From positions 1 to 64,000 of IMG/VR virus record IMGVR_UViG_3300040801_004532: 64,000 bases of DNA; one strand, 5' to 3'. Below, piece by piece: positions 4,594 through 60,575 of this stretch. A model generated the notes under the pieces. The model made no database searches and was not told where the DNA came from. It saw only the letters and a program-made list of their open reading frames with translations. Every line of letters begins with the position of its first letter. Positions within the stretch are counted from its first letter, which is position 1. The translations under genes and the position numbers were made by a program.

Positions 4594-6120
4594 TTATGGA
4601 CAGCTCCATTTATAAATATCCATCCAATCAGGTCTTGCTGGCCAAGCACAATTATTCATTGAAACATCGCTATATCCATATTTTTCTAAGAATGGGGTTC
4701 TTCTATCAACTGTTTCACCATCTGGGCAAGTTAGAACATCTTGATCGAATATTCCAGGATCATCACACCCATTAACCTTAACAGATGTTAAGCTATACCA
4801 GCATGCCTGTGCTGTATTTCCACCTGTACAATTTGTACAACTTATAGCACAACCCGAAGGAGAACCGCAATTTATTTGATTTACAGTTCCACATTTAACC
4901 ATAGTACCTGATGTACATTTTATTTTTTCTGTAATAATATTTCCACATGCATCTTCTACAGTTACAGTTGCAATACCACAAGCACTACTACTTGAATATA
5001 GGGTGTTTGTGGTTCCGACTGTCCTTAAACTTCCTAATGAGAATCCCTCCCCTGTTACAGACCAATCATAAAATCCACAATTGGAGTTTGTTGAAGTTGA
5101 ATCAATCGCAATTGTTACTGAGTCATTTGTTCCAATGACAGAAGCACTTAAATCATGATCCCACTCCATAACAATACATGAACTACAATCAGTACCTCCT
5201 GCTCCCCAACTCCCAACATATCTTCCTGCATCGTCTGTTGCACCAACAGTTATATAACCAGATGCTCCCCCGGGGTCAGCAGTTAAGGTACAACCATTAG
5301 TATATGAACCAATTGTAAAACCACTTCCGCTACCAGATTCTTGATAGCAATTATATGGAGGAAGTCCACCATCAATTTCTAAATATATAGTCTCTCCTGG
5401 TTCAACTGAGTCAGGAGAGGTTTGTGAAAATTCTAAAGTTGGATTTCCAATTTGGTCATAGTCTTTTAAAAGAAAATCAATAATATATGTCTTATCAACT
5501 GGACCGTTTACCTTGATTTTAAAACCTGTTGTTGTCTTATCAAATACCAATGCCTTATAAAAAGTATATGGAGGATCCACTGCATAACATTGTGTTATAG
5601 ATACTGTATATTGATTATGAGGTCTTGGCGATGTAAAGGTTAGAGATGCGGTTGTATCTGATGAGGTTGTATCAAATACTAAAGCTCCAGCTAAAACTAT
5701 TAATGAACTTGAGTCTGAAGGAATAAACGATTCTCCGGATGTTCCTGATGTACCAGATGTTCCTGATGTTCCTGGATCTCCCGAAGTCCCACTCGTTCCA
5801 CTCGTTCCTGATGTTGACCCACTTGTTCCTGATGTGCCAGATGTTCCAGAAGATCCCGAAATTCCCGAAGATCCGCCAGTACCAGAAGTTCCTGATGATC
5901 CACTTGTACCCGATGTCCCCGATGTACCGGAAGGAGACCAATCATCCAAATCCTGTCTGGTTACAAACGTATTGCCTGCAGTTCCATCAATACCTGAAAC
6001 TGGAGTTTGATCTGTTCTTACGAAGTAATCATCATAATAAATTCTTCCTTGGTCATTATCACCAAGTTTAATATCTTCATCAGCTCCGAAGAACACATCG
6101 CCTTTTCTAAATTTTGGCAT
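4594..6120 (-). CDS. Tail fibre/adhesin-like protein (paralog of 233-1747)
   Basis: 508 aa; GTS tract; same domain order as 233-1747. Confidence 0.7.
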   Translation of the reverse strand: MPKFRKGDVFFGADEDIKLGDNDQGRIYYDDYFVRTDQTPVSGIDGTAGNTFVTRQDLDDWSPSGTSGTSGTSGSSGTSGTGGSSGISGSSGTSGTSGTSGSTSGTSGTSGTSGDPGTSGTSGTSGTSGESFIPSDSSSLIVLAGALVFDTTSSDTTASLTFTSPRPHNQYTVSITQCYAVDPPYTFYKALVFDKTTTGFKIKVNGPVDKTYIIDFLLKDYDQIGNPTLEFSQTSPDSVEPGETIYLEIDGGLPPYNCYQESGSGSGFTIGSYTNGCTLTADPGGASGYITVGATDDAGRYVGSWGAGGTDCSSCIVMEWDHDLSASVIGTNDSVTIAIDSTSTNSNCGFYDWSVTGEGFSLGSLRTVGTTNTLYSSSSACGIATVTVEDACGNIITEKIKCTSGTMVKCGTVNQINCGSPSGCAISCTNCTGGNTAQACWYSLTSVKVNGCDDPGIFDQDVLTCPDGETVDRRTPFLEKYGYSDVSMNNCAWPARPDWMDIYKWSCP

Positions 6121-59093: not shown

Positions 59094-59134
59094 CCAACAA
59101 CTTTCAAGAGTCAAGACTAAGGAGAAAGAACAAA

Positions 59135-59680
59135 ATGGAAATGACAATAACGGAAGGTTTGAAAAGACTGAAACTCCTTGAAAAAAGGATGGCCAGAAAC
59201 TGTGGGGAAATCGAAAGATATTCCTCAATTCTATCAAATGAAAAACCTGCTTTCGATACAGAAGAAAAGCAGAAGCAAGAAGTGAAAAGTCTTATCCAGG
59301 CAAATATGGACCTGGTACAAGAATATGAAAAACTCAAAGCATCAATCGACTATACCAATCTTGTTATCAAGGTTAAGATTGGTGATCAAACCAGGACAAT
59401 CCATGGGTGGTTGACCATTCTGAGAAAGACTGGTCAGTTGCTCATTCAAACCTACAATTCCTTGAGCACGAGGGATGCAACATCAAGACAGCCCCGTTAT
59501 CGGGACCAGAACACAGGACAAAGCCCAACAGTTGTTCGTCTCTATGATGAAAATCAAAAACGGGATGGCCAAAGACTTTGGGAAGACCTTACCAAAGGAA
59601 AAGAGGTTGAAGGTCGTCTTGAAGTTATCAACGCAACAACCCAACTGCTGGATCCGCCCGAACCAGTTGAAAGGAGTTAA
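59135..59680 (+). CDS. DIP1984/DUF6847-like helical protein
   Basis: MTITEGL..LK.L.KR N-terminus, L...I..TN....V centre and L...NA.T.L C-terminus fit the family pattern as recalled; TAAGGAG SD. Confidence 0.55.
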   Translation: MEMTITEGLKRLKLLEKRMARNCGEIERYSSILSNEKPAFDTEEKQKQEVKSLIQANMDLVQEYEKLKASIDYTNLVIKVKIGDQTRTIHGWLTILRKTGQLLIQTYNSLSTRDATSRQPRYRDQNTGQSPTVVRLYDENQKRDGQRLWEDLTKGKEVEGRLEVINATTQLLDPPEPVERS

Positions 59681-59684
59681 CTCT

Positions 59685-60017
59685 ATGAAGAAGTTTGGAG
59701 CATTCCTATTAGTAATTGGTTTCGTTCTGCTCCTTTGTGCTTCTGCAAGTGCTGATGGATTCTATAGGTGTGGCGGATATATGGTCAAGATTGGAGATCT
59801 GAAGTTTCAGGTCCTTCAAAAATGTGGACCGCCAGAAATGAGAGAGTTTGTCGGAAACTCGGCAGAAAGACAAACATATAGAAGGGGCAGAACAAGAAGT
59901 TATAATTACGACATGCCGGTCGAACAATGGATATATGGACCTGACCGTGATCTATGGCATGTTATCACCTTTAAAGGTGGTAAAGTATATAATATCGAAA
60001 GTATCATTCAACGATAA
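59685..60017 (+). CDS. DUF2845-like exported protein
   Basis: Signal peptide, RCG...V.IGD....V..KCG.P...E.W.Y......F.GG.V..I. Confidence 0.75.
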   Translation: MKKFGAFLLVIGFVLLLCASASADGFYRCGGYMVKIGDLKFQVLQKCGPPEMREFVGNSAERQTYRRGRTRSYNYDMPVEQWIYGPDRDLWHVITFKGGKVYNIESIIQR

Positions 60018-60104
60018 AGTTTGGGTTCGCTGGTCCTCACTGCTGCTTTTGTGCGGTGGGTTGGTATTAAGACCAGAGGGCTACGAGAAGCGGACCCAAT
60101 ACTT
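60017..60104 (+). ncRNA. Small structured RNA element
   Basis: TTGGGTTCGC/GCGGACCCAA, TGGTC/GACCA and CTCACTGC/GCGGTGGG nested stems. Confidence 0.55.
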
Positions 60105-60107
60105 CTT

Positions 60108-60399
60108 TTGGATTCTGTAGTGTAAACAAGTGAAACCGGGGAGCCCTTTCATATTGGGATAAATATGAGACTACAATGGATATAGGTTGATTACCTATAA
60201 AACTATTTCAAGTTTCAAGTATAAATTCTCAAGTCTCACTCGTGACCGCGGCGAGGGTAAATAACCATTTGCGGGTTTCAAGTTTAAAGGGGTAAAGAAT
60301 CAAGTTTAGGGCTTGGAATGATTCCATGCGAGAAAAACCCAGGTTTGGTGGTGCATCTCTCCAGCAACATTGCCACTACTGGCTGCTACACGGATCCAA
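60108..60399 (+). ncRNA. ~290-nt structured RNA with five TCAAGT repeats
   Basis: Closing stem TTGGATTC-TGTAGT / GCTACA-C-GGATCCAA; internal hairpins; no credible ORF. Confidence 0.65.
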
Positions 60400-60408
60400 T
60401 CAATTTAA

Positions 60409-60493
60409 TGCGGCGTAGAGAAGCGGTCAATCTCAGAGGGCTCATATCCCTCCGGCGTAAGCCTCACGGGTTCGAATCCCGTCGCCGCTACCA
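60409..60493 (+). tRNA. Initiator-type tRNA-Met(CAU) with a long variable arm
   Basis: U1xU72 mismatch, A11-U24, GGG/CCC anticodon stem, 13-nt variable region, CCA. Confidence 0.85.
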
Positions 60494-60497
60494 AAAT

Positions 60498-60575
60498 GGG
60501 GGCTTGGATTAATGCTTGATCGCCCTGACTCAAGAAGCAGGGAGGAGTAGAGTAGCGACCTACTAGCCCCCACCA
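60498..60575 (+). ncRNA. Aberrant tRNA-like RNA
   Basis: GGGGGCT/AGCCCCC-A-CCA acceptor, D-like stem, CCCTG/CAGGG with 10-nt loop, AGTAG/CTACT with 9-nt loop lacking TTC. Confidence 0.7.

What the first reader, a model, noticed from the sequence alone, without database searches (positions are those of the whole stretch)
59101..60575. Candidate protein-RNA system: DIP1984/DUF6847-like protein, UCAAG-repeat RNA and UCAAG-loop tRNA mimic
Seen: (a) the leader of 59135-59680 reads TTTCAAGAGTCAAGACTAAGGAG, two TCAAG units at 7-nt spacing running into the SD. (b) A ~290-nt non-coding region (60108-60399), closed by a 14-bp interrupted stem, holds five TCAAGT copies (60208, 60215, 60229, 60278, 60300) plus TAAAG variants, apparently in unpaired segments between hairpins. 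(c) The tRNA-like gene at 60498 has ACTCAAGAAG as its anticodon loop. The protein family call is from recalled pattern only. Inference: an oligomeric RNA-binding protein that represses its own translation and is titrated by, or assembles on, a multi-site RNA (CsrA/CsrB-like or type III toxin-antitoxin-like logic). I know of no description of such a system.
Basis: partly seen in the sequence, partly recalled or inferred. Interest (0 to 1): 0.85.

Follow-up and report, generated by a model that had tools for sequence, protein, structure and literature searches.

The report
Phage protein with its heptad-repeat RNA
A large uncultivated phage carries a gene for a small helical protein of unknown function together with a stable, intricately folded ~290-base RNA that displays eight evenly spaced U-C/A-A-A-G units; the pair is conserved across hundreds of metagenomic viruses and matches nothing described so far.

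Summary
The five TCAAGT copies at 60208-60305 are the densest cluster in the 248-kb phage genome. TCAAGNNTCAAG occurs only twice in that genome: in the protein's leader and in the RNA.

The RNA (60108-60399) is a new structured family with no Rfam match. It has a closing stem, two covarying H-type pseudoknots, and two single-stranded tracts of four 7-nt-spaced U[C/A]AAG units on either side of the second pseudoknot.

In every related locus with enough sequence, the RNA lies downstream of an intact homologue of the 181-aa protein. This held whether I searched from the protein or from the RNA. Two broken gene copies lack the RNA.

Four metatranscriptome runs each hold one 260-268-nt contig that covers only the RNA.

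The protein is a distant DIP1984/DUF6847 relative (fold match to PDB 3KDQ, function unknown). Leaders of close homologues carry the same heptads running into the Shine-Dalgarno sequence (12 of 32 leaders, against 2 of 303 for other genes).

Best reading: a dedicated protein-RNA particle with autogenous translational control. Binding itself is inferred, not shown.

The tRNA-like element at 60498 is not conserved and is not part of the system. Type III toxin-antitoxin and CsrA/CsrB membership both fail. Bacterial DUF6847 genes carry a different conserved 3' RNA.

The parts
59102..59124 (+). Leader of the protein gene. Three 7-nt units (UUUCAAG, AGUCAAG, ACUAAGG), the last overlapping the Shine-Dalgarno AAGGAG (59119-59124). 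It mimics the 3' end of RNA tract 1 (...UCAAG ACUAAG...).
   Evidence: one of only two TCAAGNNTCAAG sites in the genome; 12/32 homologue leaders against 2/303 other leaders, Fisher p 5e-12.
59135..59680 (+). 181-aa helical protein, a distant member of the DIP1984/DUF6847 fold superfamily. Candidate partner of the RNA.
   Evidence: pLDDT 95; 3KDQ; 1151 cluster representatives at E<=1e-3.
59685..60017 (+). DUF2845 small secreted protein gene. A lineage-specific insertion between the protein gene and the RNA, not part of the conserved module.
   Evidence: E 1.2e-15. Absent at this position in L001, L119 and 20 or more other loci, where the RNA starts 4-40 nt after the stop codon.
60018..60100 (+). 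Strong branched hairpin followed by a U-rich run. It came with the insertion and looks like a terminator. Not conserved elsewhere.
   Evidence: -39.6 kcal/mol, z -4.0; no homologue.
60108..60399 (+). The structured non-coding RNA (292 nt) as a whole.
   Evidence: no Rfam family; 97.2% of cells paired against 78.8% shuffled; 20/26 pairs with compensatory change; metatranscriptome contigs cover 60124-60392 only.
60108..60121 (+). P1 5' strand. It pairs with 60385-60399 and is followed by the invariant GUAAA (60122-60126).
   Evidence: all 13 pairs show changes on both sides.
60144..60170 (+). Pseudoknot A. Stem 1 pairs CCC 60144-46 with GGG 60156-58. Stem 2 pairs CAUAUU 60150-55 with AAUAUG 60162-67.
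   Evidence: plus by-eye checks: at least 9 different complementary stem-2 variants.
60181..60199 (+). Variable hairpin V1. Its size and sequence differ between relatives.
60206..60238 (+). Repeat tract 1. Four heptads (60206-12, 60213-19, 60220-26 degenerate, 60227-33) and a fifth half-unit that runs into pseudoknot B. Unpaired in the consensus structure.
60239..60274 (+). Pseudoknot B. Stem 1 pairs CUCG 60239-42 with CGAG 60252-55. Stem 2 pairs CCGC 60246-49 with GCGG 60271-74. The A-rich loop 3 contains UAAAUAA.
   Evidence: stem 1 100% paired; 23 different complementary stem-2 variants in 37 RNAs.
60276..60304 (+). Repeat tract 2. Four units (UUUCAAG, UUUAAAG, GGGUAAAG, AAUCAAG), unpaired in the consensus structure.
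60314..60326 (+). Variable hairpin V2. Absent in some relatives.
60330..60382 (+). Conserved A-rich linker (GAGAAAAAC) followed by the terminal long hairpin. CCAG 60339-42 pairs with CUGG 60379-82, and 60346-51 pairs with 60373-78.
   Evidence: observed pairs CCAG/CUGG, CUGG/CCAG, CCGG/CCGG, CUAG/CUAG.
60385..60399 (+). P1 3' strand, with a single bulged nucleotide (C60391).
60498..60575 (+). tRNA-shaped element ending in ACCA, with the loop ACUCAAGAAG. Listed because the finding included it; the evidence does not tie it to the module.

Best explanation
This is a self-contained phage protein-RNA module.

The 292-nt RNA (60108-60399) is a folded scaffold. It has a closing stem, two H-type pseudoknots and a terminal hairpin. 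The scaffold holds two single-stranded tracts, each of four U[C/A]AAG units spaced 7 nt apart, on either side of pseudoknot B.

The 181-aa DIP1984-like helical protein encoded just upstream is proposed to bind these units as an oligomer, one unit per subunit or binding site. This is the way HutP and TRAP read periodic triplets. The product would be a defined particle with fixed 4+4 geometry.

In the window's clade, the protein's own leader carries two or three of the same units running into the Shine-Dalgarno sequence. Protein not absorbed by the RNA would therefore sit on its own ribosome-binding site and shut off its own synthesis. That is the logic of ribosomal-protein autogenous control.

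Shown: the motif statistics, the RNA structure with its covariation, the strict gene-RNA linkage, accumulation of the RNA as a discrete species, and the enrichment of the motif in leaders.

Inferred: direct binding, the oligomeric state, the repression, and what the particle does. Its setting among tRNA, release-factor and RNA-ligase genes hints at translation or RNA metabolism.
For: Linkage:
- The RNA is found downstream of every intact homologue examined, from 35% to 100% identity. This includes GC-rich contigs where UCAAG cannot be a by-product of base composition.
- The RNA-first scan found 29 loci. Every one with at least 600 nt upstream has the gene, with 214-269 nt from the stop codon to the RNA's 3' motif.
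- Two N-truncated, frameshifted gene copies lack the RNA.
- L125 is a complete unit: promoter, gene, RNA, terminator.

Structure: RNAalifold and the covariance-model alignment give 97% of cells paired and 20 of 26 pairs with compensatory change; slid controls give 27-49%. Both pseudoknots covary.

Repeats: there are 8.8 units per RNA against 2.8 in shuffles, a spacing peak at exactly 7 nt, and runs that never exceed four. The U, A, A and G positions are among the most conserved columns of the RNA.

Shared motif: TCAAGNNTCAAG occurs only in the leader and the RNA in 248 kb. Heptad pairs are found in 12 of 32 family leaders against 2 of 303 other leaders.

Expression: four metatranscriptome runs (two samples) each hold one 260-268-nt contig, 100% identical, covering only 60124-60392 and none of the flanking 1.5 kb.

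Protein: the model is confident (pLDDT 95). Conserved polar and aromatic residues include N22, Y29, Q46, Q55, D59, N75, R97, E163 and N166.

Superfamily: bona fide bacterial DUF6847 genes also carry a conserved structured 3' RNA whatever gene follows.
Against: - There is no direct evidence of binding. The complex prediction was not folded.
- The fold family (3KDQ, DUF6847, Gp157-like) has no known RNA-binding member and no known function.
- The leader motif is clade-limited. The GC-rich and most distant homologues lack it, and the 12 positive leaders are phylogenetically related, so the Fisher p overstates independence.
- A/U-rich sequence upstream of an SD can also be a generic translational enhancer.
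- In the window, a gene and a terminator-like hairpin separate the protein gene from the RNA, so co-transcription is not assured here.
- The metatranscriptome evidence consists of assembled contigs from one study. It shows presence and discreteness, not exact ends or abundance.
Confidence: 0.55

Rival explanations
1. The heptad tracts are read by some other factor: a host protein such as ribosomal protein S1, Hfq or ProQ, the ribosome itself, or another phage protein. The DIP1984-like protein would then be a chaperone, a processing or stabilising factor for the RNA, or would bind its folded core rather than the repeats.
For: The linkage shows a functional tie but does not say which part of the RNA the protein touches. 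The fold has no RNA-binding precedent. The bacterial DUF6847-associated RNA has no clear heptad tracts, so the property shared by the family may be recognition of something else.
Against: The same heptads occur in the leader of this gene and essentially nowhere else. That pattern is what is expected if the gene's own product reads them. The fixed 4+4 count points to a dedicated partner of fixed stoichiometry.
Confidence: 0.2
2. This is a toxin-antitoxin, abortive-infection or exclusion-like pair. The protein would be harmful or inhibitory, and the RNA would neutralise it by sequestration. The logic resembles type III systems but uses unrelated parts.
For: The protein and RNA genes are tightly coupled, and broken genes have lost the RNA. 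Structural neighbours include the Siphovirus Gp157 family. From my own recollection of its Pfam description, not tested here, that family is said to be associated with phage resistance. Bacterial relatives sit in variable, accessory contexts, one of them beside a MazE gene.
Against: There is no tandem array of 30-45-nt repeats and no nuclease-like fold. The RNA lies downstream of the gene, not upstream behind a terminator. The RNA is an elaborate two-pseudoknot scaffold rather than a processed repeat. No PADLOC search was run.
Confidence: 0.12
3. The RNA works on its own, as a self-assembling or catalytic RNA in the manner of other large phage RNAs found beside tRNA genes. The protein gene would merely share its transcription unit.
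For: The RNA sits in tRNA clusters in several phages. It has a complex conserved tertiary-looking architecture. It accumulates without its flanks. ROOL and GOLLD show that ornate RNAs can form RNA-only assemblies (PMC12286853, listed; only its abstract was read).
Against: A 100% two-way linkage across very divergent lineages, maintained even when other genes are inserted between the two, is more than operon hitch-hiking. The leader shares the RNA's motif. There is no match to any ribozyme or large-RNA family in Rfam.
Confidence: 0.08
4. The element is a cis-acting 3' untranslated region that controls the stability or translation of the upstream mRNA.
For: In most loci it starts 4-40 nt after the stop codon.
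Against: It stays associated when one to three genes are inserted between it and the protein gene (window, L132, L161, L163). It is recovered in metatranscriptomes without any of the coding region.
Confidence: 0.05

Closest known systems
HutP (Bacillus) and TRAP: oligomeric proteins that read periodically spaced triplets on single-stranded RNA
   Same: A short core motif (here AAG within U[C/A]AAG) recurs at a fixed spacing. The spacing is 7 nt, which to my recollection equals the UAG-N4 period of HutP sites (established knowledge, not tested here). The motifs are arranged in two separate tracts, which suggests two faces or two rings of an oligomer.
   Different: The protein fold is unrelated: helical and DIP1984-like, not the HutP or TRAP fold. 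The sites sit in a dedicated trans RNA with pseudoknots rather than in a transcription attenuator. No ligand is known.
Ribosomal-protein autogenous control (mRNA leader mimics the rRNA site), and T4 gp32/RegA-type translational repression
   Same: The primary RNA partner and a weaker look-alike site over the protein's own ribosome-binding site. In this genome the strict motif occurs only in those two places.
   Different: The partner RNA is not rRNA. Repression is untested. The leader mimic is present in only part of the family.
CsrA/CsrB and RsmE/RsmZ: protein-sequestering multi-site RNAs
   Same: A non-coding RNA displays many copies of a short motif that also occurs at a Shine-Dalgarno sequence.
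   Different: The motif is UCAAG, not GGA in hairpin loops. The protein is not a CsrA fold. The units are single-stranded and strictly periodic, with a fixed count of 4+4. There is no sign of a regulon: no other double sites exist in the genome.
Type III toxin-antitoxin systems (ToxIN, CptIN, TenpIN)
   Same: Adjacent protein and RNA genes, repeats in the RNA, and association with phages.
   Different: There are no tandem 34-45-nt repeats and no endoribonuclease fold. The gene order is reversed. The RNA is a single folded scaffold.
DIP1984 / DUF6847 / 'septicolysin' family (PDB 3KDQ)
   Same: The best fold match (probability 1.0) and weak HMM matches. Bacterial members also carry a conserved structured RNA directly 3' of the gene.
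   Different: Sequence matches fall below the curated cut-offs. The bacterial RNA is a different family: it gets no hit with the phage model and has no heptad tracts. No function is known for any member.
ROOL/GOLLD and other large phage RNAs next to tRNA genes
   Same: A large, ornate, conserved RNA of unknown function, encoded by phages and often within tRNA clusters.
   Different: No sequence or structure match. It is much smaller. It is obligatorily paired with one specific protein gene.

Membership tests
DIP1984 / DUF6847 protein family | Match to PF20935 or NF038048 above the curated cut-off | tested here: not met
   PF20935 scores 19.6 bits against a cut-off of 27. NF038048 scores 20.3 bits against a cut-off of 70. 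Ten of 34 homologues match at E<=0.01, best 2e-6. This is a distant relative, not a member by the curated rule.
DIP1984 / DUF6847 protein family | Same fold as the solved member 3KDQ | tested here: met
   Foldseek places 3kdq_C and 3kdq_A at rank 1-2 with probability 1.00, E 1.2e-3, TM 0.45-0.53. An ESM Atlas cluster of DIP1984/DUF6847 proteins matches at TM 0.54/0.64.
CsrA/CsrB-type sequestration system | A CsrA-fold protein, and GGA motifs in the hairpin loops of the RNA | tested here: not met
   There is no CsrA hit in Pfam or NCBIfam. The model is helical. The motif is U[C/A]AAG in unpaired tracts. No Rfam CsrB or Rsm match.
Type III toxin-antitoxin | A tandem array of about 34-45-nt RNA repeats upstream of an endoribonuclease toxin gene | tested here: not met
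   The repeats are 7-nt units inside one folded RNA that lies downstream of the gene. There is no ToxN/AbiE-like domain. No Rfam ToxI match.
Type III toxin-antitoxin | The protein is toxic and is neutralised by the RNA | not testable with these tools
   This needs expression experiments.
tRNA (for 60498-60575) | Match to the tRNA covariance model, with the conserved D and T loops | tested here: not met
   ARAGORN does not call it at default settings, or at -ps70 to -ps80. RF00005 gives no match at E<=10. The loops lack the GG and UUCRA elements.
tmRNA (standard or permuted) | A tRNA-like domain, a tag reading frame, and a score above the gathering threshold | tested here: not met
   ARAGORN at default gives none. 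A call at the relaxed threshold places the tag inside the neighbouring tRNA. Rfam tmRNA_permuted scores 13.9 bits against 47, on the tRNA T arm.
Ro/Y RNA module | A TROVE (Ro60/Rsr) gene in the genome, and a Y RNA match | tested here: not met
   No PF05731 match in the 248-kb genome, whereas the controls do match. No Y RNA or YrlA match in Rfam.
HutP/TRAP-like periodic RNA readers (works-like comparison) | Periodic short motifs on single-stranded RNA | tested here: met
   43% of successive spacings are exactly 7 nt against 1.3% in shuffles, and runs reach up to four. The tracts are unpaired in the consensus structure.
HutP/TRAP-like periodic RNA readers (works-like comparison) | A ring-shaped oligomeric protein that binds the motifs | not testable with these tools
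   Complex prediction returned no fold. The fold is unrelated to HutP or TRAP.
Any described RNA family (Rfam 15) | A covariance-model match | tested here: not met
   There is no match to the RNA at E<=1 over 12 kb or at E<=10 over 601 nt, in the window or in L001.

The most novel reading that the evidence does not exclude
The DIP1984/DUF6847/Gp157-like helical proteins, more than a thousand 50%-identity clusters in phages and bacteria, are as a superfamily the protein halves of previously unrecognised ribonucleoprotein particles. Each lineage would carry its own cognate structured RNA encoded directly 3' of the gene. The phage branch would be an oligomer assembled on two tracts of four heptads, with a role in translation or RNA metabolism during infection.
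Probability: 0.3. Interest if true: 0.9.

Novelty: categorically new. Interest (0 to 1): 0.85.

Why it matters
If the reading is right, three things follow.

First, it adds a new class of large structured RNA: two pseudoknots and eight periodic single-stranded units.

Second, it gives a first functional handle on a widespread family of unknown-function proteins (DIP1984/DUF6847, wrongly labelled 'septicolysin' or 'tail fibre' in databases). The family would be RNA partners.

Third, it offers a compact, easily testable example of periodic RNA recognition with built-in feedback, encoded by large environmental phages near their translation-related genes.

The bacterial relatives carry their own conserved 3' RNA. 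This suggests the principle extends well beyond this phage.

Everything needed for bench tests is defined here: a 181-aa protein, a 292-nt RNA and a 23-nt leader.

Tried and rejected
- Rfam searches of the window, L001 and the bacterial loci found nothing for either RNA.
- Y RNA/Ro was rejected: no TROVE gene.
- tmRNA was rejected: only relaxed-threshold artefacts that lean on the neighbouring tRNA. By-eye reading frames ending at the conserved UAAAUAA are not conserved between window, L001 and L119.
- An RNase P-like reading was rejected by eye: no P4 motifs and no Rfam hit.
- The 15-mer AAGAATCAAGTTTAG was too unspecific. It returned 117 chance loci, L002-L118, which were ignored except that 11 of them served as negative controls for the covariance model and gave no hits.
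- Three of the five hits to the 5' pattern were chance (L120-L122).
- GenBank phage records hold no DNA or protein match, so the family is known only from metagenomes.
- A PDB sequence search with the family profile found nothing.
- Complex prediction (four protein copies plus RNA 60200-60312) was not folded by the tool and is not evidence either way.
- I tried to test co-variation between the protein's S-x-E-K-P-x-F loop and the heptad variant in the P0073/P0076-80 clade. It failed because no DNA was available.
- I looked for a promoter for the RNA in the window and found no convincing site.
- The tRNA-like element and the 60018-60100 hairpin were tested for conservation. Neither is conserved.
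- The cross-pairing control for pseudoknot B stem 2 was only weakly discriminating, because many variants are G/C-rich look-alikes. The argument rests on the list of 23 distinct complementary variants.
Full report
SETTING

The window is the first 64 kb of a 248,136-bp linear IMG/VR virus record (CheckV completeness 79%, GC 35%). It encodes tail fibres, a portal, a DnaB-type helicase and a DNA polymerase. Between 53.8 and 63.5 kb it carries eleven tRNA genes interspersed with small ORFs. The finding lies inside this tRNA cluster.

THE OBSERVATION

The leader at 59102-59124 reads as three 7-nt units, UUUCAAG, AGUCAAG and ACUAAGG. The last unit overlaps the Shine-Dalgarno AAGGAG, 11 nt before the ATG at 59135.

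The non-coding stretch holds TCAAGT at 60208, 60215, 60229, 60278 and 60300, with TAAAG variants between them. A stem closes it: 60108-60121 pairs with 60385-60399, with one bulged C.

TCAAGT is not enriched in the window as a whole (52 copies against 44 expected). The local cluster, however, is unique. Five copies within 98 nt is the genome-wide maximum, against a background of 0.355 per kb.

The strict dimer TCAAGNNTCAAG occurs only twice in 248 kb on either strand, at 59104 in the leader and at 60208 in the RNA. Shuffles give about 0.15 per strand.

The tRNA-shaped element at 60498-60575 has the stated loop. No tRNA tool recognises it, and a single TCAAG in a 10-nt loop is within chance.

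THE RNA IS A CONSERVED, STRUCTURED FAMILY

A homologue of the protein at 69% identity in L001 is followed, about 10 nt after its stop codon, by an RNA 80% identical to the window's.

Homologues at 39-50% identity on long contigs all have it too. In L124, L125, L127, L129 and L131 it follows the gene. In L132 three small ORFs are inserted between them.

Twenty-six unique sequences were aligned as A4. RNAalifold, run without guidance, predicted the closing stem, the first stem of pseudoknot B and the terminal hairpin; 18 of 26 pairs carried compensatory changes.

A covariance model built from A4 found one copy in each related locus. It found none in eleven unrelated viral loci and no second copy in the window.

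On the model-based alignment of 41 sequences, 97.2% of cells are paired, against 78.8% in shuffles and 27-49% when partners are slid. Twenty of 26 pairs show changes on both sides.

Two H-type pseudoknots were identified by eye and checked by script:
- Pseudoknot A (window: CCC/GGG plus CAUAUU/AAUAUG) has at least nine different complementary stem-2 variants (and sequences).
- Pseudoknot B (CUCG/CGAG plus CCGC/GCGG, with an A-rich third loop) has 23 different complementary stem-2 variants among 37 RNAs.

No Rfam 15 family matches the RNA at permissive thresholds. Full-text searches for DUF6847, DIP1984 or the motif found nothing relevant. A catalogue of about 10,000 candidate viral structured RNAs exists (PMC10690425). 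Its candidates average 67 nt, and I could not check whether fragments of this RNA are among them.

THE REPEATS

In every lineage, two unpaired tracts flank pseudoknot B. Each tract has up to four units, never more, of N-N-U-[C/A/U]-A-A-G.

Across 37 RNAs there are 8.8 units per RNA against 2.8 in shuffles. Of successive spacings, 43% are exactly 7 nt against 1.3% in shuffles, with minor peaks at 8 and 14.

The U, A, A and G columns are among the most conserved in the molecule.

The units persist as UCAAG, UGAAG and UCACG in GC-rich (52-60% GC) relatives from Synergistaceae, Desulfovibrionaceae and Acidobacteriota bins. They are therefore not a by-product of AT-rich composition.

LINKAGE TO THE PROTEIN

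Starting from the protein, 22 of 22 intact genes with enough downstream sequence have the RNA. These include three distant members chosen from the profile search.

Starting from the RNA, a degenerate pattern of its 3' domain retrieved 4 viral and 25 metagenomic loci. Every one with at least 600 nt upstream encodes the protein, with 214-269 nt between the stop codon and the 3' motif. The six without a protein hit are cut by contig ends.

Two copies of the gene in Synergistaceae bins are N-terminally truncated and frameshifted, and these two lack the RNA.

L125 shows a complete unit: a sigma-70-like promoter, the gene, the RNA and an intrinsic terminator.

In the window, the DUF2845 gene (59685-60017) and a strong hairpin (60018-60100) are a lineage-specific insertion between gene and RNA.

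EXPRESSION

Four metatranscriptomic runs come from two microbial-mat samples of one study. Each holds a single contig of 260-268 nt, identical to 60124-60392, and nothing on the other 1.5 kb laid.

Each contig is the RNA and only the RNA. DNA contamination would have given contigs that run into the flanks. The RNA therefore accumulates as a discrete species well above its neighbours. These are assembled contigs, so exact ends and levels are not known.

THE PROTEIN

The family is large: 1151 cluster representatives at E<=1e-3 and 176 at E<=1e-30. It is absent from 50,697 GenBank phage records.

The AlphaFold model is confident (pLDDT 95). It is helical, with one beta-hairpin.

The best solved match is 3KDQ, the Corynebacterium diphtheriae protein of unknown function (probability 1.0, TM 0.45-0.53). 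Predicted-structure neighbours are 'septicolysin'/DIP1984/DUF6847, Siphovirus Gp157-like proteins and many uncharacterised phage proteins.

HMM matches to DUF6847 and DIP1984 are real but fall below the cut-offs. The PHROG label 'tail fiber' has no support from the genomic context.

THE LEADER

Among 32 unique leaders of family genes, 12 carry a pair of U[C/A/U]AAG units 7-8 nt apart within 45 nt of the start codon, usually with a third unit merging into the SD. Only 2 of 303 leaders of other genes in the same loci do so (odds ratio 90, Fisher p 5e-12).

The positives are concentrated in the window's clade and a few others. GC-rich and very distant members lack the pattern. The feature is therefore clade-limited, and the p-value overstates independence.

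The window's leader matches the 3' end of tract 1 as seen in relatives (...UCAAG ACUAAG...).

MECHANISM

The most economical reading is a dedicated ribonucleoprotein. An oligomer of the protein would assemble on the two 4-unit tracts that the pseudoknotted scaffold presents. Excess protein would then bind the look-alike site over its own SD.

The periodic reading resembles HutP and TRAP. The feedback resembles ribosomal-protein operons. The many-sites-on-one-RNA idea resembles CsrB. The parts, however, are unrelated to all of these, and the membership tests for CsrA/CsrB, type III toxin-antitoxin, tmRNA, Y RNA and tRNA all fail.

The function of the particle is unknown. Neighbours include tRNAs, RF-1/PCRF-domain genes (L125, L129) and RNA ligase (L129, L190), which is only a hint.

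Binding, oligomerisation and repression are all inferred. The one computational test available, complex prediction, was not executed by the tool.

AN UNEXPECTED EXTENSION

Eleven of 251 sampled genomes of one bacterial phylum encode bona fide DUF6847 proteins (E 1e-42 to 1e-57).

Each of these genes is followed by a conserved non-coding element of about 200 nt. Shared blocks are GGUA(A/G)C, GGCGAG, ACUACC..G...CUGA and GUGAGGGYGGG-N3-4-GGGGA. A long-range helix has 11 of 14 pairs with compensatory change.

The genes downstream all differ. Neither Rfam nor the phage model matches this element.

So a cognate 3' RNA may be a property of the whole superfamily. That strengthens the ribonucleoprotein reading and widens its reach.

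VERDICT

The protein-RNA system reading is substantially supported by comparative and expression evidence. The tRNA-mimic component and the type III analogy are not supported. I could find no description of the RNA or of the pairing.

Noticed in passing
L176-L188 (bacterial genomes G014-G201), about 10-250 nt after each DUF6847 stop codon: Bona fide bacterial DUF6847 genes carry their own conserved ~200-nt structured RNA directly 3' of the gene. Its shared blocks are GGUAAC, GGCGAG, ACUACC..CUGA and GUGAGGGYGGG..GGGGA. It is present whatever gene follows. It is not in Rfam and is not matched by the phage model. Two gene+RNA units lie 2 kb apart in G019 and in G109.
   Followed up: partly
window 60409-60493: The tRNA with anticodon CAU has a long variable arm (class II shape). 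It also has a U1-U72 mismatch and three consecutive G-C pairs at the bottom of the anticodon stem, which are initiator-like features. Similar long-arm CAU tRNAs occur in relatives (L001 5354-5442; blast matches in L119, L137, L145, L149, L157).
   Followed up: partly
window 60498-60575; L001 about 5447-5545: Directly after the long-arm CAU tRNA, both phages have a non-canonical tRNA-shaped element with a 7-bp acceptor-like stem ending in ACCA. The two elements are unrelated in sequence and inner structure, and no tRNA tool calls them.
   Followed up: partly
L001 5545-5715: Another closed, apparently structured non-coding element of about 170 nt (GGAUGCCUU ... AAGGCAUCC) lies downstream of the tRNA cluster. 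It has no Rfam match.
   Followed up: no
L191 about 2085-2160: In one distant relative, the variable region between pseudoknot A and tract 1 of the RNA contains what looks like a complete tRNA (D arm, anticodon arm, GGUUCGAUUCC T arm).
   Followed up: no
window 59685-60100: A DUF2845 small secreted protein gene plus a very stable branched hairpin (z -4.0) is inserted between the protein gene and its RNA. Relatives have other small ORFs inserted at the same junction (L132, L161, L163), which suggests a hot spot for insertions.
   Followed up: partly
L125 1978-2859; L129 4366-4782 and 753-1919; L190 294-827: Release-factor-domain genes (PCRF/RF-1) and RNA ligase genes lie within 1-2 kb of the module in several relatives.
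   Followed up: no
L172 and L173 (Synergistaceae bins): These copies of the protein gene are N-terminally truncated and frameshifted (broken near residues 38 and 112). They lack the RNA, whereas intact copies in sister bins keep it.
   Followed up: yes
G000 contig, about 241.1-241.7 kb (outside the window): CTTGA recurs at exact 75-nt intervals, which indicates a tandem repeat array with a 75-bp period.
   Followed up: no
window 60114-60551: At a relaxed threshold (-ps80), ARAGORN calls a permuted tmRNA whose tag frame lies inside the neighbouring tRNA gene. Rfam's permuted tmRNA model scores 13.9 bits against 47. I judged this an artefact.
   Followed up: yes
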